Of a stretch of DNA of 64,000 nucleotides, positions 22,194-58,112 are shown in pieces. The first letter of the stretch is position 1, and the number at the start of each line of letters is the position of its first letter. The position numbers were made by a program, and so were the translations under genes. This stretch comes from Octopus bimaculoides (taxonomy: Eukaryota), in NCBI RefSeq assembly GCF_001194135.2, contig NC_068983.1, positions 53,032,280-53,096,279 of the forward strand. The letters are read 5' to 3'. The notes under the pieces are model-generated. The model did not search any database, was not told where the DNA came from, and saw nothing but the letters and a program-made list of their open reading frames with translations.

Positions 22194-22254
<61 letters not shown>

Positions 22255-22368
22255 NNNNNNNNNNNNNNNNNNNNNNNNNNNNNNNNNNNNNNNNNNNNNN
22301 NNNNNNNNNNNNNNNNNNNNNNNNNNNNNNNNNNNNNNNNNNNNNNNNNNNNNNNNNNNNNNNNNNNN

Positions 22369-22427
<59 letters not shown>

Positions 22428-22465
22428 CACACATATACATACGTACATACATATATGTATATACA
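22193..22465. repeat. (CA)n(TA)n microsatellites around a 114-N gap
   Basis: Directly visible; similar blocks either side of gap 22255-22368. Confidence 0.95.
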
Positions 22466-24496: not shown

Positions 24497-24650
24497 AGAA
24501 ACCATGTTAAAACTGGAACATATGAGCAAGATGTTGTCCTCCAGTCATTCTAGGAGAGCAGTAAGTCAAGATAAACATTGACTTACTGCTCTTCTAGACA
24601 GACTGGAGAACCACATCTTGTTCATATGCTCCAATTTTAACATAGTTTCT
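24497..24650. repeat. Imperfect inverted repeat, 73-bp arms, 8-nt loop
   Basis: 24497-24569 versus 24578-24650: 9 mismatches by manual alignment; loop GATAAACA. Confidence 0.95.
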
Positions 24651-26573
24651 ATGATAAGTCAAGATAAGAATTGATTCAGACTGTAACAACTCACTTAGCC
24701 TGTGCAAGTGTAAAATGTGGACATAAAATCATGATGATAATATGTAAAAATAAACCTCGAAATTAGATTTATATTCATGTATGCATTGTATACAGTTGCT
24801 GGCAGATACTTAAACATTTTTAGCATATTATCCTGGATTCTGGAGTTCTAATATTTTGTTTTTTAATTTTTAGTTCAAAACTAGGTATTTGTTAAAATTT
24901 ATTACTTTGTAGCTCACCAGAGAGTTACAAAGCATGAATAGAAAATATGATAATAATTTCAACATTGTTAAGAAAGTATATTAGCTAGCACAATGCCAAA
25001 AGGCTCATAATTTAGTGTGTTTAAAGAAAGAAAAAAGATGTTGAATTTTATGAAATATAAGTAAAGATATGCTTAAGAACTGCATTAATATTCTTAAAAA
25101 AAAAGAAAATGAATGTTTTATCATGTTGGAAAATATTCTCTTATTCAGATGTTATAAAAATATGTTTTTATATTCAGAACTGGATATTTGTTAGAAATTT
25201 AACATACAATATTTTCTACTTAAACAAAATTGTTTCTGACATAGGACAGCCACAATATTGCATCTGTATATATATGTTCTATGATTTATAGCTTTATTTT
25301 GATAAATGGAAATCTACTGAAGAGATGTTATCAATCATAACATAAAAAGAAACCATTTTTGTTTGTAATTTTATGCGAAAGTATGTATGGTCGATTGTGG
25401 AATGTTGCCTGAGATAAATATTTTTGGAAATAGCTTCTGATCATCATACAGACTTGAAAGTGAATGAAAAAATAACTGAATACTATAGAGAAATTTAGTT
25501 AATACAGGCTTTTATAAATAAGCTGATATCAGTTTTGTCGTTTAGTCAGTTTTCTATCTACTGTCCTAATGTTTGAAATAGTAGAAATATTTAGGGTGGG
25601 AAAATTTATAGAAATTTGTTGATTCGAAGTGCCATCACTTGATTTCAGTGAATGATTATGTCAGTAGTATTTAATGTATAATTTTTTTGTTTTTGCTTTC
25701 ATCTTTTTATATGCTAAAATTAAATTAAAATCTTTCAAAGGAGGCATTCCTTTCTCTGCTCTACCATGAAATAGTGAGATATAATCTGTATGATCAGGAA
25801 AATTGTTTATTAATAATTTACACCTCACTACTGCTGTTATTTTAATTTAAAAGTATTTATGCAATATTAATTCTTGTTGATATATTTTTTATTCTTCAAC
25901 CTTGCATTTTACTACTTTAAAGAATTTAAGTTTTCATTTAACATGACATCATAATCAAAGACTACCTTTCTCTACTGCGTAAGATTTGTTTTTTGTTCTT
26001 TTGTAATTTCTATAGTTCTGTGCAGGCAGACTTCTTCAATGAAAATAATTTTGGTTTAAATTTTACTTAGAGCACTAATACAGCAATTTTCTGTTAATTT
26101 TCCAAAACTTATTTGTAATTATACATAGTAATGCTAATTATATTGGAATTAATGATACTTCGTTTATTTATCTCTTTTTAATTAAATTGAAAAGGCACTC
26201 ATTTTAATTTATATTTTCAAAAACAGTGAAGAATAATTAATTTATCATATTTCAGTTTCAAAGAATATTAGCATTACATATGGTGGTATTTTTGAAAATG
26301 TCATTGCGCATATTTTGCAATTTGGGTTTATTATTTTGCTTCTCACCTAAATATCCTTCTTATCCATAACCACCTTACTGTGAAACAGTAGTTAGACCTG
26401 CTTTTAAAATAGGTATTTTGAAACAAGAGTCAGAATATGCACAATAATCACTCAGATTTGAATTCCAAGCCATATTATTTGTAGTTCCATACTTACAAAC
26501 TCTGTGACTTCCAGTAATATGCTCTTTAGCAAGTTTAACAACCAGACAGTTAAGTTAGCAACAACTAACTAAC

Positions 26574-33280: not shown

Positions 33281-33522
33281 TTCTTTTATTCTTTTACTTG
33301 TTTCAGTCATTTGACTGCATCCATACTGGAACACCGCCTTTAGTTGAGCAAATCGACCCCAGGACTTATTCTTTGTAAGCCTAGTACTTATTCTACTGGT
33401 CTCTTATACCAAACTGCTAAGTTATGGGGACGTAAACACACCAGTATCGGTTGTCAAGCGATGTTGTGGGGACAAACATAGACACACAGACACACACACA
33501 TATATACATACATACATATATG

Positions 33523-33566
<44 letters not shown>

Positions 33567-33684
33567 ACAGGCTTCTTCCAGTTTCCATCAACCAAATCCA
33601 CTCACAAGGTGCCATGCAGTGGGACTGAACCGCAACCATGTGGTTGGTAAGCAAGCTACTTACCACACAACCACTCCTGCACCT
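33281..33684 (-). mobile_element. SINE composite: module A (internally deleted) + (TA)n/(CA)n + complete module B
   Basis: Reverse complement of both signatures; module A lacks about 40 bp between two CAAGG microhomologies relative to 6278 and 56795. Confidence 0.92.
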
Positions 33685-37174: not shown

Positions 37175-37442
37175 CATTCAAGCATGGGTCGATGCCAGTG
37201 CCGCCTGACTGGCTTCTCGTGCCAGTGGTACATAAAAAGCACCATCTCCTGTACCGGTGGCATGTAAAAAGCACCCACTACACTCTCGGAGTGGTTGGTG
37301 TTAGGAAGGGCACCATCCAGCTGTAGAAACCTTGCCAAATCAGATTGGAGCCTGGCGCAGCCTACTGGCTTGCCAGTCCACCAGTCAAACTGTCCAACCC
37401 ATGTCAGCATGGAAAACAGACGTTAAACGATGATGATGGTAA
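37128..37442 (+). mobile_element. (TA)n followed by a well-preserved family C element with (GAT)n tail
   Basis: GGTGGCATGTAAAAAGCACCCACTACACTCTCGGAGTGGTTGGTGTTAGGAAGGGC...CAGACGTTAAACGATGATGAT; retains CpGs. Confidence 0.92.
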
Positions 37443-37835
37443 TGATGGTGATGAACACAATAAAATATTTCTGCTAAGTATAATTAATAGTTGAGAAAAT
37501 GAATGATTTTTAGAAGTAAAATATTCCTGTATAAAGTATTCATTAGGTAACATCATTCAAAGGTAGTGATTTTATTTTTGTTTTCCCCTAACCACATGTC
37601 ACCTTTTGTCAGCTTTGCTTTAGCTATTCACCAATACTATTAAACAAAAGAAATGGTTAGTAATGGATCTACATTGTTTCTAGTGTTTGTTATTGTCACC
37701 TTTTTATTTCTTTGATGCATGTGCTGCAGCACAAATATATAATGGAAGGTCTGTCTAACAATTCCGCTTGTATTGTAGCTGAGCCTTTAGTTTGAAAGTA
37801 CATCAGATAATGATATAACTTTTGCCTTTTTTCAG

Positions 37836-40299: not shown

Positions 40300-41415
40300 T
40301 GCCATTCTATAGCAGAAGTTAATGGAACTTTTTGCTTCTTCTGGAATCAAGGCAAACTTCCATAGAAAAGTTGCTCTGATTGCTCACATCTACAAGCATA
40401 AGGGAATTAGATAGTGCTACCAATAACAATCATGGAATGTTCTTTTGTTGAGAATATCCTGCTGAACTGTTTCATCAAACAAATTGAGACATGTCTGCTC
40501 CCTGAAAATCAGTGTGGTTTCTGTGACAGACATAGCACCTTAAACATGGTTTTTGCTGCAAGACAACTTCAGGTCATAATCAAAACATTTGTGGAACTAA
40601 CCAAGGCATTTGACAGTGTGAGCTGTGAAGGTGTTTGAGCTGAATGGGTGGATGTACAGACAAATTTACCAACATTGTCAGGGAATTAGACAACTGCATA
40701 ATGGCTCATGTTTCCTACGATGATAATGTATCAGTAAACTTTCTTGCCAGCATTGTTGTAAAAATGGGAATGCCTGCTGGTGCTAACAGTGTTAAGTATG
40801 ATGCTCTTAGCAATTGTCACTCCTACATTCAAAGATTATCCTTCAGGAATTTGCATCCATTACATAATATATGGCAGATTTCATAATCATTCACACTTGA
40901 AAGAAATCATTAAAGTTCAGACTACATTCAAAGCACAATTATAATTTTGCAGATACTTTGTTCATTGAATTCTTGTAATGCCAATGATATACAAACAAAG
41001 ACAAGAAAGATTCTTTGTAGCCTGCAGCAAATTTTAATTGAATTCAACCCTCACCTGGTCTTGAGTGCATTGAACCAAAAATTATGGTCAAAGATACATG
41101 TCAGCAGTTCACAGAGAAGTTCAATTACTTTGATAGCCTTCCAGACAGGTCCATGTTGATAAGATCAGATCTAGGATGGCCAAGCATGGTCAGCTTTTGG
41201 AAGACAATGCTTCATTATCTGGGAACACAGTAGTATCAGCATTGCCAACATGCTGGATATTTACAAGGCAGTAGTGTGCATGACACTTCTCCATGCCTAC
41301 CAAATATGGACTGTCTGCAGCAGACATACCATATACTGATACTTCCTCATCACAAGTCTCTGAAGTCAGTTCAACATTAAATGATAGGGCAAGGTTCAAG
41401 ACACAGAAGTGATCC
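40300..41415 (+). mobile_element. Decayed RTE (RTE-1/BovB-like) LINE, RT region
   Basis: LLPENQCGF...MVFAARQLQ, TFVELTKAFDSVS, GCTDKFTNIVR, and downstream SAFGR / IYKAVV..TLL..IWTV motifs; internal deletions and stops. Confidence 0.88.
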
Positions 41416-44094
41416 AATGGGTGGAATTCTTATCAATACATATTCTGTTGCAAATAAAAAGAAAAATTCACTGGACTGGTTATATCAACCACACTCTCAT
41501 TACCTTCCTCACTTTTCTTGTCCTTTTCTTTACCATTTGCATTGTTCCTTTTTTCTATCTTTGCTACAGCTATACCTTCTCCCATTAAAGGAGTTTATTG
41601 TTATTTTTAGTGATGGTGTTTTCATTACTGACTAAATGAGGTCAGTGACCATTGTTGGTAAAAATACAAGGGAAGAATCTGAGTAGCAAATCATTCATTT
41701 TGACTGGTAAAACTTTTAGACAGGCAGCAGCTGTAGAGTTAGCACTAACACTGCTATCATGACTCCCTCTCATTGCTCATTTCTCTTAAGACATCAAACT
41801 TATTGACATTTTCTATAAAATTATTTGTCCTCTAGCTACACACAGTGGGAAAAATAGCTATGATCCCCTTAATTAGTTCGTTTGAAGAGACTCTGAATGT
41901 TTTTAAAACTATTTTCCTAATAACATATTAATTACAATTATAAAAAATAAAACTTTCATTGGAAAAAAATTATAGAAATCATTGCAAACTTACGGAGCAT
42001 CTGTGTTCATACTTAAAGTAGTTTGGATACAATAATAAGTGATAATGATTTTTCATGCAGGATTAAAAATAAAACTGTTGAAAAGCAGAAAATCCTCTTA
42101 CAAGGAAGCCAATGACCATATATATCTGAAGAGAAGTTGGATGATGTTAGGTTATCTATCTACTGAAACAAAGTCAGGCATGATCATTGTACACTTATGT
42201 TAAACAACCATTATTATAACATGGATCCAGCACTCAGCTCAGTCCATCACATGTGTTTGGTAATGGGAGTAATCCATGATCTTTATAGTATGTTCAGATT
42301 GGTCTGAGGTGACTATCTTACCACACACACATGCACAATCACACACACACATGTATATATTTTTATTGACCAGCCAATCAAAATCTGTAACCTATGGAGG
42401 TCATAATTGGGACAGGATGAAATGTAGTTCTCCTTCTCCATCTTTACTGGTCATCAGCCAATGGAGCCCAATCAATTTGCTTTACTGAAACTAGGAAGAA
42501 GACAACTGTGCATTAAAAGCACTAAGTATTAAATTTGGGGTTTGTAATTTGATTAAATTTGAAAGTTCTGTAAGAATATTCAAATTATAATATTTAATAT
42601 TTTATAAATCTTTGAAATAAAAAAATTAAAATACCTAAACATTATCCAATTATATTTCTAAAATTTTATTTGTTTTTAGGAATTTAATTGTTTTCTAAAT
42701 GATGCAGCTTTTATGACCACCAAAACTATTTACAAAATGTAAAACTTTAGTTCACATGAATGCTTGTTTCCAATACTTTTATTTTAATGTTTGAGTCCTA
42801 GTTTCCTTAATCTTATACACATTTTCTATTGGAGAAGTGAATATAACTCAATTTTTTTAACAATTGAATTTTAAGTTAAGCATGAAATATGTTGCTATTT
42901 TATAATTGTATCAACTGTGATGGATTTCATGGAAAAATATTGTTGTTTATTTACTTAAACACGTGTGCGAACATTTCCATATGAAGCATGAATTTCATTT
43001 GTGTTCAGTGTAAGAGCCTGAACATGTATACAGCATTATATTTCTATGTGATTTAATAATTTCAAATAGCATTTTGAAAAATTCTTTTAAAATTACTTTT
43101 TACTAACCTCTACTTTCTTTAACTCATAACTTCAAAAATTTGGAGTTGCAATTTTACTTCTTAGAACATATGCTTACTTGCTTCAGAGGTTTTCTTAATG
43201 AGTAGAAAATTCCCCCATGTTTCGGGTTTGCCATTCATCTTACCAACATTTTAGATTGAACTTAATCTAACCATTATTTTCTTGCTGTAGCTTAAAGATT
43301 TGCTCATTTTTTTTATATTTTACATATTTGTGTGAGTATACCTTGTGATACTCTTTTATATTTTGTTTGAAGAACAAGGGCATATTTTTATTTTGTTAGT
43401 TTAAAAACAAGTTTTGATATTGAGATAAGATTGGTGTTATGGTTCAATTCAAATTTGATGTTTTATCTATTAGAAAGCAAGATTTTATTTGGTAGATTGA
43501 ATGCAAAGTGTATTTAGTATTGTTGGATCAGCCCTAACATGTGAAACATACTCAATCATAAAGTTTATTTCCCTTTTCTCTAAGATTTGTAGCAGTTGAG
43601 GCAAAATAATTTCTAGCTCTGGAGAGAAAACTTAATCTTTGTAAAGATTTTCATAATGTGCAGTCAATGTCATTGACTTAGCTGCATATCCATAGATATG
43701 CAGTATTTTAAGCTGGTTTTCTTTTCACATTGGATCTATTTTAAGTTTTATTAATGCTCATAACATATTCTAGTTTCAAATTTTGCAAAAATTAAGCTTC
43801 TCTAATTAAGATGCATTAACATGTTGAAATATCAATTGTAATGCCATATATTTATCTCATGCTTTAGCTATTAGTTTTATATATTTCGGTATAATTGTTT
43901 CAGGCTACTTGATTAAAAATTAAATGCTGTTCCTTAATTCATGCTGTAATGGTTTAAAATGGGTTTCCTGCAGTATTAACATTTTTAGTCTTTCCTCTAT
44001 TTTTTAAGGTGAGAATGGACACACACCTATGAAAGATATAATGACAAGATCAATGGTTCTTCTAATTTCTGATTTTTATCTATAAATGATTTAA

Positions 44095-44460: not shown

Positions 44461-46660
44461 TATAGATAATGTTAGGGAAATTTGCATACTTTTAGCTATA
44501 TATTTGATTGTCATCATGCATATAGCAAATCTATAAATAAAGACAACTTTGAAATCCATGGATTATATTTGCTGTCAAAAATGTTTTACCCAGAGTGCCT
44601 CTGTACATATGAAATAACATCCTAGACAGATGTCTTCGATATTTTTGACTGTTTAATATGTATTGAAAAAGAAATACATTTGTTGATGTGCTTTTCTAGA
44701 TTAAAAAACTAAAACATTTATCTGGCAACTGATTTTGAAAATATAAGTCAAAGGATTTAGTTAAATTTTGTAATAAAGTTTGATTTGTCTGAGAGGAAAA
44801 TATTATGTTTTACTTGATCAGATTGATTGCTGTTAGAAGAAAGGATATGAGGATATGAAGTAAACTAGTACAGATACTACAAGGGACATGAAATCAATAA
44901 GATGATTGACTAAAGTGGTCAAGCATCTGTGGTCAAGTATTTCTTAGTACTTGATAGAATCTATGACAAAGAGAAGTTGTGTATTAGTTTTAGAATTGTT
45001 TAAAAGAAAACTGAACATGTTTCATTCTTTATTTTGGTATGAAATAAGGAATAAAAATTTCACATTATAACAGTATGACAATTTTATTGAAGAGAAAGTG
45101 ATTGCAGAGAAGGGTTGATGCTATGATTTTCTTTTAACAGCTTAAGTGTTGTATTTATTGTAAGAGAAGTCCTTCTGTTTTATGGTAAAATCTGTTCAGT
45201 TCAAGCATTAAATTCTCAATATAGTTTGAAAACAAAACTTCAAAAGAAACAGACAAAACACATGCAAATGTTTTGCTTACCAAAACTGTTTTATTTTGGA
45301 AAACTTTCCCCAGCTCATATCACATTTTAGGAAAAATGTGTTGATAACCCTTTCTTGTACATTTATTTTTTATATATAGTGGTTAGATGTCTTGCAATAA
45401 GCACTGAACTCTAGGACACTGGATTATTTTGTTTCTAATGCAAAGTTATCTGAATCTAAATATTTATCTTTTTTCATATCCTCTAAATAATGCTCAAATC
45501 ACTTATATTCTATTTGTCATATATCATTGGGATGTTCTCCACACTTACTACTTATTGCATATAAGAATCTCATAGAAGTAATTTATAGGTTATTATGTGT
45601 TATCTTGATTTAGTTCTTCTCAAAGTATAGAGGTTATAGACATTGCTTATTGTGAATTTAATAGCAAAATAGTAGTAATTTGAAAACTCTGCTGATAATT
45701 ACATTAATTATAGCACCAACTGTGAAAACATGCAGAATTTTACCAATGGTAAATAATTCAATAGAAAATTTACAGTAAAATTACATGTCCTTAAATCTAC
45801 TGTTTATTAAAATAACTTTAAATTGGTTGTTTCTGATTTCCTTTCCACAATGGCATAAAATTATTGCATTATTTGCTAAATTAGGATTCAAATTTTAATA
45901 AAAAGCATTTGTCAGTATATATATATTTTAAAATTCATCATGCTTGAAACTTGTTATGAGTTACATAAAATCAATAGCATGGATGGCATTTAACATTTGC
46001 TATTGAGGGAAGTTATATTTATTTAATTTAAATACATGTTTGTAAATCACTATTTCTTGAGAATTTATCTAATTGAAGTTAATATATTTGTTGCTTGAAC
46101 ACTGATTAATATTTTACAGATTTTGTTTAGAGATCTGAAGTAATTTAGTTACTCAACACTCTTTTGGAAATAATTGTTACTCTGTTATTATTCTAAGTCT
46201 ATAAAATATTGCTTAATTCTAATTGGTACATAGGTAGAATTTTATAGGAAAAGGATGTAATCAAATGACTTGGCTCTAGTATATTACTAATGTTTGCTTT
46301 AGGTATTGCATATAGATAGATGATTACATCTAGTCTTCCAAACTCTTCTATTATTTGTTTCAAATGTTTTATCAATCACTTTAGGCTATCATTTCTAAGC
46401 TTTGCAAGTGGTGCAACCACACATTGGAACAATAATCAAAGCAACTAAAAATGAGTGTTATCCAGAGACTCTTATTTTGGAAATAGCTACTGGCTACATC
46501 TTGCTTGATGCTTGCTGATTTTAAGTATGAGTCTTCAAATGCTTATTGTATTTAGGTTGAATGTCATTTCAGTAGTATACTAACTGCATTTCTTCTGCAT
46601 TTAGTTTTATGATTTATTAATAACAATAGTCTTCAATACTAATAGGATATTCAATGCTCC

Positions 46661-46868
46661 AAGCTGGCATAATCGTTTGTACGCCAGGCAAAATGCTTAG
46701 TGGCATCTCGTCTGTCTTCATTTTCTGAGTTCAAATTCTGAGGTCAATGTTGCCTTTCATCCTTTCAGGGTCATTGAAATAAGTAACAACTGAGAACTGG
46801 GGTTAATGTAATTGACTAAGCTTCCCTCTTTGAAATTGCTGGCCTTCTGCCAAAATTTGAAACCAATA
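46661..46868 (+). mobile_element. SINE family D
   Basis: GCTGGCATAATCGTT...TTCTGAGTTCAAATTC...GCTGGCCTTCTGCCAAAATTTGAAACC. Confidence 0.88.
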
Positions 46869-48040
46869 TTAATAGGACACTTAAATTCTATGCTGTCAGT
46901 ATCATAGCTGGTACTGTAGTCGGCAGATATATTATGTGAGGTTTATTGTTTCAGCTGTTTGATCAATAGAACGATCTTATCATTGTAATAGGGATTAAGC
47001 AGTTGTGTAGACTCAGTGCAACAGTGTGCATGATTAAGTTAGCCTTTTCTCATACTGAGAATATGATAAGAAGCACTTGACCAATTAGATTGGAAACCTC
47101 TAGATTTCAAAGTAAAAAACTTGATTATTTGACCATGCCTGCACCTATTGTCAAAGGCAAGAATCACAACATCAGTAGCTATTGCTAATAAGAGAAAACT
47201 TTTGGTGTACGTGACTGGTTATAGTACACCAGTAGCTTCCTGCTGCAAGAATTTGAAGAAAAGGAGGTTGAATATTAATTCTTCTCTGCTAAGATCCAGT
47301 CCTACCGAAGAAGCTACAACATTCTGAAAACGATATGCCGTTGGAAATATACTAGAAGAGGTTAACATTTTGCACAAATGACTGCTTGAATGTGTGTGAA
47401 AGGGATATAAGCATCAGTGGAGTGATAGAAAAAGGCTTGAAATTCATCTCTTATAAATACTAAACTAGTATTGCCCAAGCTGGAACAGAAGTGTACAATG
47501 TAGTAATATAAAACTGAATTGCTACAAAATGCTTTTGTTTTCAGTATTCTGAAGGCTGTAGATTTGAAACTGTAGTTTTAATATATATAGTTAAAAAAAA
47601 TTCTATGTAAAGCAAAATGTAAACTGAATTATTCAGCAAAATCATTTCATATTCTGTCTGTATTTTAATACACTTCTTTTATTAAAATTGTTTACATCTA
47701 TCTTTTTTCATATATTGCTGTTATAGGAAAATTTTAATACATTTTTGTATTTTTTTAATATGATATTGTTTTACTTCGATTTTGCTTTTTACATAATATT
47801 CCTCTATTTAAAACATGTTCAAAATTAGAGTGATATGTAAATTGTCTTTGTTTAAAGTATTTTTTGTTCACTGTACTATGTTTGTCTATGTGAAGCTTTG
47901 TCTGAAATATATTGTCAGACATTTAAAACTTTTTGCTATTGTAAAAATCATATTTACAGTGAAAGGAGACTGATATATTTTAAAATTAATGGTGTAATTC
48001 ATTTAAGTTATTTATAAACTCAGACAATACTGGTACCTAC

Positions 48041-51156: not shown

Positions 51157-51382
51157 TTAACCTGTTCATTACTGTATTTATTTTGAGATGCCCTGCGTTT
51201 CTTTCTATTACTTTAAATATAGCAAAGAATTTAGTAAAATGACTTAGTCATCATTCAGCTAGTGTTAGAAACAAATTGTGACTAAGGTTTGGTGGAAAAT
51301 TTTAATTCAAAATTTATGAAAACAAGACATTTGTACTCAGAGCCAGAGCTGGTTTCAACTGAGTTGGTAACGAAAGGGTTAA
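51157..51382. mobile_element. Non-autonomous piggyBac-type MITE with TTAA target duplication
   Basis: TTAA|CCTGTTCATTAC ... GTAACGAAAGGG|TTAA: 13/16 terminal identity including the TTAA; CCC-type terminus at the right end. Confidence 0.7.
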
Positions 51383-51696
51383 TGTTTTGTAGATGTGCAG
51401 AAGCTGCAAAGTAATCTAGGAGAAATTCTTATATTTTCAAAATATCAATTTGTCTTTATGAGAACTGTAATTTTTGCATCTTAGTGAAACACAAGTAGTA
51501 TAGTTGAAAGTTCTCAAATAAAATATTAATAGTGCAGGTGATTCTATGAAATGAAGAAAAGAAATAATATTAATATGATCCACTGTAGGTGTAACAAGAA
51601 TCTGTTTGCTAAGCTGTGTCTTCTTATTTCTTCAAGAATCAAATTTATAAAAATGTAAATATAACATACCAAATATTATTTAATCTATTTTTGCAG

Positions 51697-51758
51697 AATT
51701 GGACAAATCTTTAGTATTCTCTAATTGTGTTGATTTTGTCTACTTCAGAATATTACTG
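51697..51758 (+). CDS. Candidate exon (LDKSLVFSNCVDFVYFRILL)
   Basis: TAATCTATTTTTGCAG acceptor, CTG|GTATTT donor, single open frame. Confidence 0.18.
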
Positions 51759-51907
51759 GTATTTATGCATGAAATAACAAGTGATAAATGTTACTCTAAA
51801 CTACCATAGCAGGATAAAGTTCTGTAAAGAATTTAGTTTGTAACTTCACTTTTTCTACTAGATTGTTGGTTTTTAATTCAAATATTGATAAATTTTTACT
51901 TTGACAC

Positions 51908-52394
51908 GAAACACAAAGCCAAATCTTTTTACTTTGTTGGGGTAGTTGTGTTCTATTAAAACATTTTTTGTTGGTCTCTGATTTCTGAGTGTTCCATTTG
52001 AGAGGGATGAAACTACTGAAATGAATTATTTTTCAATATGCTTACTTTTACTGTTAGCTCCCTGGTTTTACCACTGAAATGAAAAGTATTTCCAGTACTT
52101 GTAAAAGTGTTTATCATAGCTTAAATTCTCCTTGCTATCATTCATTTATATTATCATTGAATGATAGCAAGGAGAATTTAAGCTATGATAAACACTTTTA
52201 CAAGTACTGGAAATACTTTTCATTTCAGTGGTAAAACCAGGGAGCTAACAGTAAAAGTAAGCATATTGAAAAATAATTCATTTCAGTAGTTTCATCCCTC
52301 TCAAATGGAACACTCAGAAATCAGAGACCAACAAAAAATGTTTTAATAGAACACAACTACCCCAACAAAGTAAAAAGATTTGGCTTTGTGTTTC
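51908..52394. repeat. Perfect inverted repeat, 237-bp arms, 13-nt loop
   Basis: 51908-52144 is the exact reverse complement of 52158-52394 (checked base by base); loop TTTATATTATCAT. Confidence 0.99.
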
Positions 52395-53477
52395 TTACAT
52401 TTCAAGTTATAGACCCACAAAGCATTTTTGCTAGAATGAAGGGTTTGCAGTCATGATCTTTACAGGCCCTTCAACTCAATGGGTGCTATTAATTTACTCC
52501 AAATAACCACTGCATGAAAAAAAAAAAAAATGATAAAATATATTTTGTTCCTTTTTGAATTCTTGAATACTCTTTTCAATACTGTTTCAACACTGTTAAT
52601 TGCTAAACTGAAAAAATTATAGGTTTGTTGATCTAAACCCTATATAAAAAAATAAAATTCAATTCTTGAAGGTCATTTTAAAATATGCATAATACAAGAA
52701 TTGACAACCAACTGGCAATTTGAGTAAGAACTGATTAAAAGTGTAGTATGAAACCTAGAAAAGTAATCTGGAGATGTTAAATAACTATGCCATGTTAAAT
52801 CCATTGAAGTATTTTGTATGCTAGAAGTTGCACATAGAAAGAATTTAGGTTTCTTCTGTAGATGTTTTGTAAGTTTCTCTCCCTAGTTCCTGTTTCAGAA
52901 CTTCTTTTCTCTTCTGCACCTTGATATACAGGATATACAAATTTCAAATTAAGGGTTTGGATATAGTAAGATTTGAATTTTACATCTGAAATTTTAAAAA
53001 AAGCACAAATACCTTCATAGCTAACTATGAGAGCTTATTTCAAAATTGCTTTGAATTTAGTTCTTTACAACGTAGGATAATATATTGAGAAAGTTTCATA
53101 TATATTCTTTGGATTACAAAATAATTTAAAATTTAAATAAAATTTCCTTACTGTTAATAGTAATTTAATGTTAAAAACAAAACAAAAAAATAATAATAAT
53201 AATATATGTATTAAGTTTCTGAAAGTTTACAGTCTGATATTTTTACCCATATTCAGTTTTGTAGCCACTGATTGATTATTTTCTACATTAATACCTAATA
53301 TAATATATATTGTTATTGAAAATATACCATTATGAATTATTTATTTCCTAATTAATGAATTCATATCTTAGAAGTCTTTGTGATGTTATTTTTTTACTTT
53401 TGAAAATTGTATGTATTCACTCTTCTTCTCACAATAGCATTCTATATCAGGTGAGAAAAAATAGCTGTTTATAAGTA

Positions 53478-54204: not shown

Positions 54205-54361
54205 TACATCATCATCATCATTTAACGTCCACTTTCCTTGCTAGCTTGGGTTAGATGATTTGACTGGGGACTGGCGAACCAGATGGCTGCACCAGGCTCC
54301 AATTTGATCTTGCAGAGTTTCTACAGCTGGATGCCCTTCCTAATGCCAACCACTCCAAGAG
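54205..54361 (-). mobile_element. Family C element 3' half
   Basis: (ATC)n TTTAACGTCCACTTTCC...TTTCTACAGCTGGATGCCCTTCCTAATGCCAACCACTCC, truncated by (TA)n. Confidence 0.92.
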
Positions 54362-54384
54362 TATATATATATATATATATATAT

Positions 54385-54485
54385 ATCTTATAGTAAAAAT
54401 GGATACATAAGGGTGGAAAATCACAGGAATAATGGTATTATTCCTGTGATTTTCCACCCTTATGTATCCATTTTTACTATAAGAT
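54385..54485. repeat. Perfect inverted repeat, 49-bp arms, 3-nt loop
   Basis: 54385-54433 is the exact reverse complement of 54437-54485; loop GGT. Confidence 0.99.
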
Positions 54486-55166
54486 GAATTCTAGCTCATG
54501 CTGAGCACTTCAACNNNNNNNNNNNNNNNNNNNNNNNNNNNNNNNNNNNNNNNNNNNNNNNNNNNNNNNNNNNNNNNNNNNNNNNNNNNNNNNNNNNNNN
54601 NNNNNNNNNNNNNNNNNNNNNNNNNNNNNNNNNNNNNNNNNNNNNNNNNNNNNNNNNNNNNNNNNNNNNNNNNNNNNNNNNNNNNNNNNNNNNNNNNNNN
54701 NNNNNNNNNNNNNNNNNNNNNNNNNNNNNNNNNNNNNNNNNNNNNNNNNNNNNNATATATATATATATATATATATATAATCTTTGAGCATTTTCATGAC
54801 ATTCAGCTTGAACTATCTTCTAGGTTTCTTGGCTGTAACAATTCTACATAAAGCAACATTCTAGGATAAGAAAAATATTGTCATTTCAAAGTAGGTGTCA
54901 GAATAGGTATTGTAGTGCTGTTTTGATATATATATGCTTGTTGGAAGTTCTGATAAACATATGGTCTTGAAATATTCACTTCTTGCCCTACTTGTGAATA
55001 GTTTTCACTACGATCACAGGCATATACATGTATGCATACATTTGGCAACTATGTAAATACTCACCAAATGTATGTATGCATGTGTGTGTCTGTATATCCC
55101 TGCATATGGGATTTGTATGGTTTTACTTTTATATATGTACATATACATAAATTTGTATGTCTTTAA

Positions 55167-55562: not shown

Positions 55563-55954
55563 GTAAGTATGCCTTCTATATGACTGTAACTTCTTATTTT
55601 CTGATATTTGTGTGTGTGTGTGTGTGTGCATATGCATATATGTGTGTATCTTTGGGCAGGTTTTGATCTTTGGGCTTGTGTATGTTTGTGTATGATAGCC
55701 ATTCAGTTTACTGACAGTTGCTCATTAAAACACTACACTACAATCACTAGCTATCTTTGTATTTTTATCTCTGTTAGAAAACAGCAAAAGAAAGCAAATA
55801 CTTAGAAAAGTGTCTGCATAACTTTGTTGCTTCGTTGGCATAATTATTTGCATACTTTCACTGCTCTGGCCTATCGAACAATGTGTCTTTCACTTACTAC
55901 TGTTGCATTTACTGTCTTACCACTTCTCTTTTCACAATGTTTCTCCTAACTAAT

Positions 55955-56170
55955 GCAGCAAGCTGGCAGAAGCATTAGCATGCTGGGTGAAATGCCTAGC
56001 GGTATTTCATCTGAATCTATGATCTGAGTTCAAATTCCACTAAGGTCGACTATGCTTTTCATCCTTTCGAGGTCGATAAATTAAGTACCAGTTGCATGAT
56101 GGGGTCGATCTAATCGACTGGCCCCCTCCCCCCAAATTTTGGGCCTTGTGCCTAAAGTAGAGAGGAATAT
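55955..56170 (+). mobile_element. SINE family D, full length and relatively young
   Basis: Complete signature with CpGs retained (GGTCGAC, GGTCGATAAATTAAGTACCAGTT, GGGGTCGATCTAATCGACTGGCCCC). Confidence 0.93.
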
Positions 56171-56794
56171 TTATCCTAACTCATGCTCTCTTTGAGTTAT
56201 TACTCTTTAGAATTACCTTCTTACTCATGTTCTGCAAACTTTGATCCACAGTTGTTTAAGATAAATATCAACAACAAATACCATTAATCTAAGAAAATTT
56301 GCAAAGGTGTTGTGCATTCTCTGCTAACCAACTTATCTACCACTTATGTTTCTGTCTGTCTGTCCATACATGCATGGCTACATGATTAAAAACTTTGTTT
56401 AGCAGTCACATGGTTTGTGATTTGGTCCTACTGTGTGGTACTTTCGATAAATGTGTTATACAATAAGCCCAAGGTGACAAATACTAAGTGAGTGACTCTG
56501 GCAGACAACTGGATGTGTGCGTATACGTGTGTGTGCAAGTGTGCAAGACTTCCACACTTACTGCTTGAAGAAACAATGATAATATTAACATTTCTTATGG
56601 ACTAGTCGCTGTTTGATTTTGAAGATCTCTGGAATAGAAATTACTTCACTTGTAAAACAAGTAAGGATTGGTAATGAGAAGAACAGCATGCTCAAAATAA
56701 CTCCCTGTCTTGTCCAAATGTGAAAAAAACAAGATGCCATATTAAAAAATGAATGAATGAATACACATTTAAAATATATTCACATGTATGACTA

Positions 56795-56939
56795 TCTGGT
56801 AAGTAGCTTGCTTCCCAACCACATGGTTCCAGGATTAGTCCCACTGCATGACACCTTGGGCAAGTGTCTTCTACTTTAGCCTCAAGCCAACCAAAGCCTT
56901 ATGAGTGGATTTGGTAGACAGAATCTGAGAGAAGCCTAT

Positions 56940-56976
<37 letters not shown>

Positions 56977-57228
56977 GTGTATGTATACATTTATATCTGT
57001 GTGTCTTTTGTCTTCGTATCTATGCTTGTTCCACTACCATTGCTTGACAACCGATGCTGGTGTGCTTGCATCCCCATAACTTAGTGGAAGAGACCAATAG
57101 AATAAATACTAGGCTTACAAAGAATAAGTCCCGGGGTCGATTTCTTTGACTAAAAAGCCCTTTAAGGTGGAGCTCCAGCATGGCCACAGTCAAATGACTG
57201 AAACAAACAAAAGAATGAAAGAAAGAAT
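56795..57228 (+). mobile_element. SINE composite: module A + (TG)n(TA)n + module B
   Basis: Both signatures collinear with 33281-33684. Confidence 0.92.
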
Positions 57229-57780: not shown

Positions 57781-58112
57781 AGGCTCCTCTAAGGGATATC
57801 TGGGGTAACATTACTTCACAGGGTGCATAGCTGGAGAACAAGGTGTCTTACTGAGGGATCATGGCTCTAGTACACTGGACATGTGACTAGAATGCTACAA
57901 TGGGTTCTTCAAGCTGAGCCAAGTAGCAGAAGACCTAGGGTTATTCCAAGAATAATATTGTTGGGTAATATCCATAGCTTCAGCTGGTTATGCTTGAGAA
58001 TCCAGCCAGAAAATGTAATGACGGTTGCTTCTGATTGCACATTATGGAAGAGATACCTGAAGACTATATCTAGACCCTCCTAGGAATAGTGGGTAAAGAA
58101 GATGGATGGATG
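57781..58112 (+). mobile_element. RTE-clade LINE 3' end, Rex3/Expander-like, with (GGAT)n tail
   Basis: YTGHVTRM..VLQAEPSSRRPR...SWLCLRIQPE..VASDCTLW and terminal GAAGATGGATGGATGG. Confidence 0.75.

What the first reader, a model, noticed from the sequence alone, without database searches (positions are those of the whole stretch)
51908..52394. Perfect 237-bp inverted duplication of unique DNA with a 13-nt loop
Seen: 237/237 complementary; the arms match no repeat family in this window; no TSD or TIR-like ends; unique sequence resumes on both sides. Established: long perfect palindromes extrude cruciforms and are unstable, and when transcribed they form dsRNA that is a substrate for ADAR (A-to-I editing is exceptionally extensive in coleoids) and for Dicer (hairpin endo-siRNAs). 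Inference: a very recent fold-back or template-switch duplication, or homogenisation by intra-arm gene conversion; possibly a newborn hpRNA locus inside an intron, 150 nt downstream of a candidate exon. An assembly or library fold-back artefact remains a real alternative.
Basis: partly seen in the sequence, partly recalled or inferred. Interest (0 to 1): 0.75.

Follow-up and report, generated by a model that had tools for sequence, protein, structure and literature searches.

The report
Perfect 487-bp palindrome in octopod DNA
A 237-base stretch of otherwise unique, non-coding octopus-like DNA sits next to an exact back-to-front copy of itself; it is most likely a recent copying accident during DNA repair or replication with no shown function, and an assembly error cannot be excluded.

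Summary
Arms 51908-52144 and 52158-52394 are 237/237 complementary around a 13-nt asymmetric loop (TTTATATTATCAT). The arms have no other copy in the window, no target-site duplication, and complementarity stops abruptly at both outer ends. The window is octopod-like, AT-rich and non-coding as far as I could detect, and comes from a gapped short-read-type scaffold.

My best reading (about 0.55) is a real, evolutionarily recent fold-back (snap-back or template-switch) inverted duplication, probably neutral. Three points favour it:
- The turn is an asymmetric loop, not a zero-spacer graph turnaround.
- The far junction to unique DNA is complete, which one-sided fold-back chimeras do not give.
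- The window also holds an older hairpin (73-nt arms, 88% identity) with a significant template-switch footprint.

An assembly or library artefact remains a serious rival (about 0.3). I could reach neither reads nor the orthologous locus. A second perfect palindrome (49-nt arms) in the same window points to something systematic.

The hpRNA/ADAR/intron reading has no support. The "candidate exon" is one of 292 equally good segments, no coding signal exists, and the Rfam matches are generic hairpin hits.

Interest is low to moderate.

The parts
51908..52144 (.). Left arm of the palindrome (237 nt, 32% GC, complex non-repetitive sequence)
   Evidence: exact reverse complement of 52158-52394; no other copy in the window; no copy in 105 kb of other octopod loci.
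52145..52157 (.). 13-nt asymmetric loop TTTATATTATCAT. It has a 3-bp inner mini-palindrome (ATA-T-TAT) and two mismatched positions (T52147/C52155 and T52145/T52157).
   Evidence: and a direct read. The loop is not self-complementary, so the turn is spelled by specific sequence rather than by a zero-spacer symmetry.
52158..52394 (.). Right arm, an exact inverted copy of the left arm. It joins directly to unique flank sequence (TTACATTTCAAG...).
   Evidence: no TSD and chance-level complementarity beyond the arm; the right flank is single-copy.

Best explanation
This is a real, evolutionarily recent inverted tandem duplication of 237 bp of ordinary non-coding octopod DNA, made by a fold-back (snap-back) event.

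Proposed mechanism:
- At a double-strand break or stalled fork, a 3' end folded back on its own strand a few bases from the present loop.
- It primed on a very short microhomology and copied about 237 nt of the adjacent sequence in reverse.
- It was then captured by the other end (end joining or a second template switch), giving flank-arm-loop-arm'-flank.

Zero differences in 237 paired sites put the arm divergence below about 1.3% (95% Poisson bound; my inference). The duplication is therefore young, or it is being homogenised.

It most likely has no function. Its expected behaviour is that of a long short-spacer palindrome:
- It is prone to hairpin or cruciform formation and breakage.
- It decays by point mutation or central deletion.
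- It would form a perfect 237-bp dsRNA hairpin only if the locus happens to be transcribed.

What is shown: the anatomy, its uniqueness, and the absence of transposon hallmarks. What is inferred: the mechanism, the age, neutrality, and that the structure exists in the animal's DNA.
For: The anatomy is exact and cannot be chance.

The architecture is that of a completed local inverted insertion.
- The inverted copy lies 13 nt from its template.
- Both outer junctions lead into single-copy DNA.
- The symmetry ends abruptly: 11/40 complementary beyond the arms, and the first base already differs.
- A one-sided fold-back chimera would instead run on into the reverse complement of the left flank.

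The loop is asymmetric and 13 nt long. A de Bruijn-graph turnaround ("inverted loop") arises at self-overlapping k-mers and gives spacer-less palindromes (bioRxiv 10.1101/2022.01.20.477068).

The palindrome does not sit at a contig edge. The nearest N runs are 2.1 kb downstream and 29.5 kb upstream. All three gaps in the window lie at TA/CA microsatellites.

The same window holds an older hairpin that cannot be an assembly product.
- It lies at 24497-24569 / 24578-24650, with 64/73 pairs and an 8-nt spacer.
- A 20-nt direct repeat (18/20 identical; 0 of 500 shuffles reach its score) spans its centre and recurs just outside its right arm.
- That is the footprint expected of snap-back priming followed by a return upstream, so the process has operated in vivo in this lineage.

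Fold-back inverted insertions at breaks are documented. In yeast most are 5-34 bp (PMC11724301). Pol theta can extend stem-loops from two terminal base pairs (abstract of PMC11292364).
Against: - I have no independent molecule-level evidence: no reads, no depth, and no orthologous locus. All protein-based routes to other assemblies failed.
- At 237 nt the copy is about 7-40 times longer than the typical fold-back insertions described in yeast (PMC11724301).
- The longest perfect short-spacer inverted repeat in the human genome has 140-bp arms (PMC13155455). A real example should therefore be rare.
- Yet this 64-kb window holds two perfect palindromes, this one and 54385-54485. About 82 kb of gap-free octopod sequence from other assemblies holds none. 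That pattern fits a systematic feature of this particular assembly at least as well as it fits biology.
- No junction microhomology or flanking direct repeat could be shown for this palindrome.
- Perfect long palindromes are expected to be unstable in vivo and hard to sequence.
Confidence: 0.55

Rival explanations
1. This is an assembly or library artefact: the animal's DNA holds only one arm, or an inverted repeat with a different and longer spacer. In this reading the perfect palindrome was produced during gap closure or local reassembly of a short-read scaffold, using fold-back chimeric reads formed at end repair, or by an unknown long-read gap fill followed by polishing.
For: - The window is a gapped, short-read-type scaffold. 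It has N runs of 10, 114 and 240. The contig ends across the 10-N gap overlap by exactly 50 nt, and those across the 114-N gap by 61 nt with one mismatch. So this assembler leaves local errors.
- Arms of 237 nt exceed typical short reads, so the structure had to be inferred by walking.
- A second perfect palindrome (49-nt arms, 3-nt loop) ends 29 nt before the 240-N gap.
- Two perfect palindromes in 64 kb against none in about 82 kb of gap-free octopod contigs from other assemblies suggests something systematic.
- Perfect identity is what an artefact gives by construction.
- Fold-back chimeric reads at natural inverted repeats are a documented library artefact (PMC10908179).
Against: - Fold-back chimeras are one-sided and occur at low frequency (PMC10908179). 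They do not provide the arm'-to-right-flank junction.
- That junction shares no sequence with the reverse complement of the left flank. A graph or overlap join would need real reads carrying the outer end of the arm in inverted orientation next to the right flank.
- The 13-nt asymmetric loop is not what a graph turnaround gives.
- From my own knowledge, the loop does not look like a sequencing adapter.
- The palindrome is 2.1 kb from the nearest gap.
Confidence: 0.3
2. This is a mobile element with a hairpin architecture: a fold-back element or palindromic MITE, or a transposon with long terminal inverted repeats whose interior is only 13 nt. It would have been inserted here very recently.
For: - The whole unit is two inverted arms with sharp outer boundaries.
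- The genome is rich in transposon remnants: a mariner-like ORF at 7187-7528, RT-like ORFs at about 40.4-41.4 kb, and many SINE-like copies.
Against: - No target-site duplication of any length from 2 to 12 nt exists, even with shifted boundaries.
- There is no other copy in the window or in 105 kb of other octopod sequence.
- A 25-mer from the arm is absent from JGI metagenomes, GTDB genomes and IMG/VR.
- The arm ORFs hit no protein.
- The termini match no transposon terminus that I know (own knowledge, not a test).
Confidence: 0.07
3. This is a functional or newborn hairpin-RNA locus. The palindrome would be transcribed, and its 237-bp perfect dsRNA stem processed by Dicer into endo-siRNAs and/or hyper-edited by ADAR. 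This reading presupposes that the palindrome is real.
For: Only the structure supports it. If transcribed, the RNA folds into an uninterrupted 237-bp stem of -422 kcal/mol. That is longer and more perfect than any requirement of Dicer or ADAR (established knowledge).
Against: - There is no evidence of transcription, of a host gene or of an intron.
- The arms match no gene, so there is no candidate target, whereas Drosophila hpRNA arms derive from their targets (PMC10317233 and PMC10292708, abstracts).
- Rfam gives only sub-threshold, structure-driven matches.
- No paper in the library links hpRNAs to cephalopods.
Confidence: 0.05

Closest known systems
Fold-back (snap-back) templated inverted insertions at repaired DNA breaks (SD-MMEJ, Pol theta or Pol delta fold-back synthesis; replication template switching)
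   Same: An inverted copy lies immediately beside its template, separated by a short loop. Both flanks continue as unique DNA, and there is no target-site duplication. This architecture is the one described in PMC11724301 and PMC5728401.
   Different: - The copy is 237 nt, against mostly 5-34 bp in the yeast amplicon study (PMC11724301).
- No priming or capture microhomology can be demonstrated here.
- The ancestral allele is unknown.
Human palindromic AT-rich repeats (PATRR11, PATRR22, PATRR17)
   Same: It is a several-hundred-bp, nearly or fully perfect palindrome with little or no spacer in non-coding DNA. It is expected to extrude hairpins or cruciforms and to be hard to clone, amplify and assemble (own knowledge; PATRRs are mentioned in PMC7680136).
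   Different: - It is not AT-enriched relative to its surroundings: the arm is 68% AT against 69.5% for the window.
- It has a 13-nt asymmetric loop.
- There is no evidence of polymorphism or of a role in translocations.
Drosophila hairpin RNA (hpRNA) loci
   Same: It is a long inverted repeat that would give an extended perfect dsRNA hairpin if transcribed.
   Different: hpRNA arms derive from, and target, a protein-coding gene, and they yield Dicer-2-dependent siRNAs. Here the arms match nothing, and expression is unknown.
Fold-back chimeric reads and palindromic misassemblies
   Same: The arms are perfectly identical and the loop is short. The setting is a short-read scaffold that has other local assembly defects.
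   Different: - The far junction to unique DNA is complete.
- The loop is asymmetric.
- The position is 2.1 kb from any gap.
- Known fold-back chimeras are one-sided and occur at low frequency (PMC10908179, PMC12870357).

Membership tests
Fold-back / template-switch inverted duplication | The inverted copy lies directly adjacent to its template, separated by a short spacer | tested here: met
   Arms of 237/237 are separated by 13 nt.
Fold-back / template-switch inverted duplication | Both outer junctions continue into unique flanking DNA, and there is no target-site duplication | tested here: met
   The flanks are single-copy. There is no TSD, and complementarity beyond the arms is 11/40.
Fold-back / template-switch inverted duplication | Microhomology at the switch points, or a short direct repeat left by the return switch | tested here: inconclusive
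   No significant repeat exists between the centre and the flanks for this palindrome (p about 0.7-1.0, best p about 0.03-0.09 uncorrected). Any priming microhomology would be hidden inside the arms. The older hairpin at 24497-24650 does show such a repeat (18/20, 0 of 500 shuffles).
Fold-back / template-switch inverted duplication | An ancestral or alternative allele with a single arm | not testable with these tools
   No orthologous locus or population data could be reached.
hpRNA locus | A long inverted repeat able to form an extended dsRNA stem | tested here: met
   The RNA fold is an uninterrupted 237-bp stem, -422.3 kcal/mol, z = -44.
hpRNA locus | The arms are homologous to a target gene | tested here: not met
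   The arm has no other match in the window or in the other octopod loci. Its ORFs hit none of 5.8 billion proteins.
hpRNA locus | Transcription across both arms and Dicer-dependent 21-22-nt small RNAs | not testable with these tools
   No expression data are available.
PATRR-type palindrome | A several-hundred-bp near-perfect palindrome with no spacer or a very short one | tested here: met
   The total is 487 bp, with perfect arms and a 13-nt loop.
PATRR-type palindrome | Marked AT-richness relative to the surroundings, especially at the centre | tested here: not met
   The arm is 32.1% GC against 30.5% for the window.
Palindromic MITE / fold-back transposon | A target-site duplication flanking the element | tested here: not met
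   No 2-12-nt direct repeat is present at exact or shifted boundaries.
Palindromic MITE / fold-back transposon | Multiple dispersed copies in the genome | tested here: inconclusive
   No copy exists in the 64-kb window or in 105 kb of other octopod loci. That is far too small a sample of a multi-gigabase genome.
Known RNA family (Rfam) | A score at or above the family's gathering threshold | tested here: not met
   There are 0 matches at gathering thresholds. In E-value mode there are 39 sub-threshold matches to unrelated families, mostly miRNA precursors, on both strands; 38 of them overlap the centre of the palindrome.
Fold-back assembly artefact | The palindrome abuts a contig end or gap, or continues as the reverse complement of its own flank | tested here: not met
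   The nearest N run is 2,121 nt away. The right flank is unrelated to the reverse complement of the left flank.
Fold-back assembly artefact | No spanning molecule exists, and arm depth is not doubled | not testable with these tools
   No reads are available.

The most novel reading that the evidence does not exclude
The palindrome is real and is one of many. In this reading, octopod genomes generate short-spacer fold-back inverted duplications at an unusually high rate. Three hairpin loci of different ages lie in this single 64-kb window: perfect 237-nt arms, perfect 49-nt arms, and 73-nt arms at 88% identity. Such a process would continually seed long perfect dsRNA-forming hairpins, which become ADAR hyper-editing and/or Dicer substrates when they land in transcribed DNA.
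Probability: 0.1. Interest if true: 0.6.

Novelty: new member of a known kind. Interest (0 to 1): 0.3.

Why it matters
If real, this is an unusually long perfect short-spacer palindrome for an animal genome. The longest perfect one reported for human has 140-bp arms (PMC13155455).

It would be a natural substrate for studying how a metazoan tolerates or resolves cruciform-prone DNA. With the two other hairpins in the window, it also hints that fold-back duplication may be a frequent mutation class in octopods. Because coleoids edit RNA heavily, such loci could be a source of new dsRNA substrates.

If it is an artefact, it flags a systematic error class in this assembly. That class would contaminate any genome-wide survey of inverted repeats, hairpin RNAs or editing sites.

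As it stands, it is a single neutral-looking structural variant with no demonstrated function.

Tried and rejected
**Routes to independent assemblies or reads. All failed.**
- Exact look-up of the 51-aa and 34-aa ORFs inside the palindrome: not on record.
- Homology search with 17 concatenated ORFs from 51285-53226: no hit.
- Homology search with most (54 of 60) ORFs from 41.9-62.5 kb: no hit.

**Search for a host gene. Nothing found.**
- Pfam on 84 non-repeat ORFs from the whole window plus the transposon ORFs: 0 families.
- GC islands in the window are largely SINE or other transposon copies.

**Arm 25-mer in public collections.** It is absent from JGI metagenomes, GTDB genomes and IMG/VR. 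This was expected for animal DNA and is uninformative beyond excluding contamination or a virus.

**Rfam.** There is nothing at gathering thresholds. E-value mode gives only structure-driven sub-threshold matches, so I rejected them as evidence for a miRNA or RNA family.

**Transposon reading.** Rejected for lack of a TSD and lack of copies.

**Microhomology and direct repeats at the junctions of this palindrome.** Nothing significant was found. An 11-mer TTTTTACTTTG occurs 5 nt before the arm and again 18 nt inside it (p about 0.09). An 8-bp stem forms between the end of the right arm and the right flank. I treat both as chance.

**Sampling other octopod assemblies for similar palindromes.** Five loci of about 20 kb each were fetched (O. 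bimaculoides, O. vulgaris, and ENA ERZ21867824), plus a 2.5-kb ENA locus. None held a comparable palindrome, but the sample is small and the species differ.

**Octopus genome paper for assembly details.** PMC4795812 is not held, and further literature searches on the assembly method were unproductive.

Full report
**1. The observation**

- My own script and the repeat finder give a left arm at 51908-52144 and a right arm at 52158-52394, 237/237 complementary.
- The loop is 13 nt, TTTATATTATCAT (52145-52157).
- The loop is nearly symmetric about T52151, with 4 of the 6 further positions pairing. That is why repeat finder reports 243-nt arms at 99% with 1 nt between them.
- As RNA the region folds into one uninterrupted stem of -422.3 kcal/mol, against -115 +/- 7 for dinucleotide shuffles, z = -44.
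- As DNA it folds at -282.9 kcal/mol, z = -44.6.
- The arm is complex sequence of ordinary composition: 32.1% GC against 30.5% for the window.
- It has no other copy in the window. The best other blastn hit at word size 7 is 16 nt.
- No direct repeat of 2-12 nt flanks the structure, even with shifted boundaries.
- Complementarity beyond the arms is 11/40, which is chance level, and the first flanking pair already mismatches.
- Both 300-nt flanks are single-copy.

**2. The setting**

The window is 30.5% GC and carries three N runs: 5691-5700 (10 N), 22255-22368 (114 N) and 54515-54754 (240 N).
- All three gaps lie at TA/CA microsatellites.
- The contig ends across the 10-N gap overlap by exactly 50 nt. 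Those across the 114-N gap overlap by 61 nt with one mismatch.
- This is the signature of a scaffolded short-read, de Bruijn-type assembly with imperfect gap closure (my inference).
- The palindrome lies inside a 32-kb gap-free stretch. It is 2,121 nt from the nearest N run.

The taxon guess is plausible.
- A mariner-like ORF (7187-7528) hits, among named proteins, only Octopus bimaculoides and O. vulgaris.
- It also hits unnamed contigs of ENA assembly ERZ21867824.
- The window's SINE-like repeats match an O. vulgaris chromosome locus at 75-90% identity.

I found no coding exon anywhere in the window.
- 84 non-repeat ORFs plus the transposon ORFs hit no Pfam family.
- Concatenated ORFs from 51285-53226, and from 41.9-62.5 kb, hit nothing among 5.8 billion proteins.
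- Rfam finds nothing at gathering thresholds.
It carries no weight.

**3. Two more hairpins in the same window**

A dedicated scan found two further short-spacer inverted repeats of complex sequence.

The first is at 54385-54433 / 54437-54485.
- It is 49/49 perfect with a 3-nt loop (GGT).
- Its left arm abuts a (TA)11 run that follows a SINE-like repeat copy.
- Its right arm ends 29 nt before the 240-N gap.

The second is at 24497-24569 / 24578-24650.
- It has 64/73 pairs (88%) and an 8-nt spacer.
- With 12% divergence between its arms it cannot be an assembly product.
- It carries a clear mechanistic footprint. The 20-mer TAAGTCAAGATAA-AC-ATTGA spans its centre, and recurs as TAAGTCAAGATAA-GA-ATTGA 5 nt beyond the right arm (18/20 identical; 0 of 500 shuffles reach its score).
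- That repeat contains a small inverted repeat (TCAA...TTGA) that could have primed snap-back synthesis. The duplication of the 20-mer is what a return switch upstream of the departure point would leave (my inference).
- Fold-back inverted duplication has therefore happened in vivo in this lineage.

Neither perfect palindrome shows such a repeat.

None of the three arms has a copy elsewhere in the window or in 105 kb of other octopod loci.

Those other loci hold no comparable hairpin. They comprise about 82 kb of gap-free contigs from O. vulgaris GCA_951406725.2 and ENA ERZ21867824, plus 11 kb of non-N O. bimaculoides sequence.

**4. Real or artefact?**

This is the central question, and I could not settle it. 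No reads are available, and every route to an orthologous locus failed.

The sequence itself leans towards real DNA, for four reasons.
- Fold-back chimeras made in vitro, by end repair at natural inverted repeats, are one-sided (PMC10908179). After the turn they run back into the reverse complement of their own flank.
- Here the right arm stops at exactly the mirror of the left boundary and joins unrelated unique sequence. For a graph or overlap assembler to make that join, reads must exist that carry the outer end of the arm in inverted orientation next to the right flank. So at least the outer part of the inverted repeat is real (my inference).
- A de Bruijn-graph turnaround ("inverted loop") arises at self-overlapping k-mers and gives palindromes without a spacer (bioRxiv 10.1101/2022.01.20.477068). 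The turn here is a 13-nt asymmetric loop, which must be spelled by reads.
- The structure is not at a contig edge.

Four points weigh against it.
- Arms of 237 nt exceed short-read length, so the structure was inferred by walking.
- Perfect identity is what an artefact gives by construction.
- The assembly demonstrably leaves local errors.
- Perfect long palindromes are rare in well-finished genomes. The longest perfect inverted repeat with a spacer of 8 nt or less in human has 140-bp arms (PMC13155455). Only 718 human palindromes exceed 200 bp in total, even allowing mismatches, and these are mostly AT-rich (PMC7680136).

Finding two perfect palindromes in one 64-kb window therefore implies a systematic source. 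That source is either lineage-specific biology or something specific to this assembly. I put real at about 0.6-0.65 in total (including the transposon and hpRNA sub-readings) and artefact at about 0.3.

**5. Mechanism**

The best-supported mechanism is fold-back (snap-back) synthesis.
- A 3' end at a break or stalled fork folds back on its own strand.
- It primes on a few base pairs and copies the adjacent 237 nt in reverse.
- It is then captured by the other end.
- Such local inverted insertions are documented at yeast breaks, though mostly 5-34 bp (PMC11724301). They are also documented in the SD-MMEJ and Pol theta literature (PMC5728401 and PMC11292364; abstracts).

The present case is much longer than these. 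Its priming microhomology cannot be seen because it would lie inside the arms.

The three hairpins give a rough age series (my inference, using a 95% Poisson bound of 3 expected differences divided by the arm length).
- This palindrome: zero differences in 237 sites bound the arm divergence below about 1.3%.
- The 49-nt palindrome: bounded below about 6%.
- The old hairpin: 12% divergence.

Together they would form a birth-and-decay series, if the two perfect ones are real.

**6. Function**

Nothing supports a function.
- The hpRNA/ADAR idea rests on structure alone.
- There is no evidence of transcription, of a host gene or of a target gene.
- Drosophila hpRNA arms derive from their targets (PMC10317233 and PMC10292708; abstracts), whereas these arms match nothing.
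- In E-value mode Rfam returns 39 sub-threshold matches on both strands, mostly to unrelated miRNA precursor families, many of them from plants. All but one overlap the centre of the palindrome. The other two hairpins behave the same way. This is the generic response of hairpin models to any perfect stem.
- No paper in the library connects hpRNAs with cephalopods.

**7. Comparison and novelty**

In kind, this is a fold-back inverted duplication and a long short-spacer palindrome.
- It resembles human PATRRs in size and symmetry, but it is not AT-enriched relative to its surroundings.
- It resembles hpRNA loci only in its potential RNA structure.
- It fails the transposon tests: no TSD and no other copies.
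- I file it as a new member of a known kind, of low-to-moderate interest.

The most novel reading that the evidence does not exclude is a high rate of fold-back duplication in octopods, seeding dsRNA-forming loci. It deserves a cheap genome-wide census before anything else.

Noticed in passing
window 54385-54485: A second perfect palindrome of complex sequence: arms 54385-54433 / 54437-54485 are 49/49 complementary with a 3-nt loop (GGT). The left arm abuts a (TA)11 run that follows a SINE-like repeat copy (54207-54366). The right arm ends 29 nt before the 240-N gap, and the sequence after the gap restarts with (AT)13. It has no other copy in the window or the other octopod loci, and no junction direct repeat.
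   Followed up: partly
window 24497-24674: An older hairpin inverted repeat: arms 24497-24569 / 24578-24650 with 64/73 pairs (88%) and an 8-nt spacer (GATAAACA). A 20-nt direct repeat spans its centre (24563-24582) and recurs just beyond the right arm (24655-24674), 18/20 identical with 0 of 500 shuffles reaching its score. This is the footprint expected of a snap-back or template-switch inverted duplication.
   Followed up: partly
window 5571-5750 and 22195-22430: The contig ends on either side of the 10-N gap are exact 50-nt direct duplicates. Those flanking the 114-N gap overlap by 61 nt with one mismatch. Both sit in TA/CA microsatellites. The gaps are therefore probably spurious (unmerged overlaps) and suggest a de Bruijn assembly with k near 51.
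   Followed up: partly
window 7187-7528 (+): A mariner/Tc1-like transposase C-terminal remnant (114-aa open frame). It is about 63% identical to unnamed ENA proteins, and the only named hits are from Octopus bimaculoides and O. vulgaris. Pfam did not recognise it at E <= 0.01. As DNA it is 85% identical to a copy in an O. vulgaris locus.
   Followed up: partly
window 40411-41430 (+) and 57871-58080 (+): By eye these are degraded LINE-like reverse-transcriptase fragments and a LINE ORF2 C-terminal tail (motifs such as ...FRPGRST..-like, and GHV.RM...RP.GRP...A.DR..W). They have several frameshifts, and Pfam found nothing at E <= 0.01.
   Followed up: no
window, e.g. 6273-6573, 33281-33669, 37276-37454, 46653-46873, 54207-54366, 55952-56174, 56773-57223: Several families of SINE-like repeats occur in multiple copies in both orientations, often followed by TA or CA microsatellites. 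They match repeats in an O. vulgaris locus at 75-90% identity.
   Followed up: no
L006 666-1097; L003 10584-10978: Other octopod assemblies hold young inverted repeats with longer spacers. ENA ERZ21867824 contig ctg120461l has 83-nt arms at 97.6% identity with a 267-nt spacer. O. vulgaris has 125-nt arms at 85.6% with a 148-nt spacer. These are probably transposon-related.
   Followed up: no
L001, L004-L006 (ENA ERZ21867824): An ENA analysis-type assembly with hifiasm-style contig names (ctg...l, up to 514 kb) carries octopod-type transposons and has dense prokaryote-style ORF calls of 29-200 aa. It looks like cephalopod host DNA deposited as, or within, a metagenome assembly.
   Followed up: no
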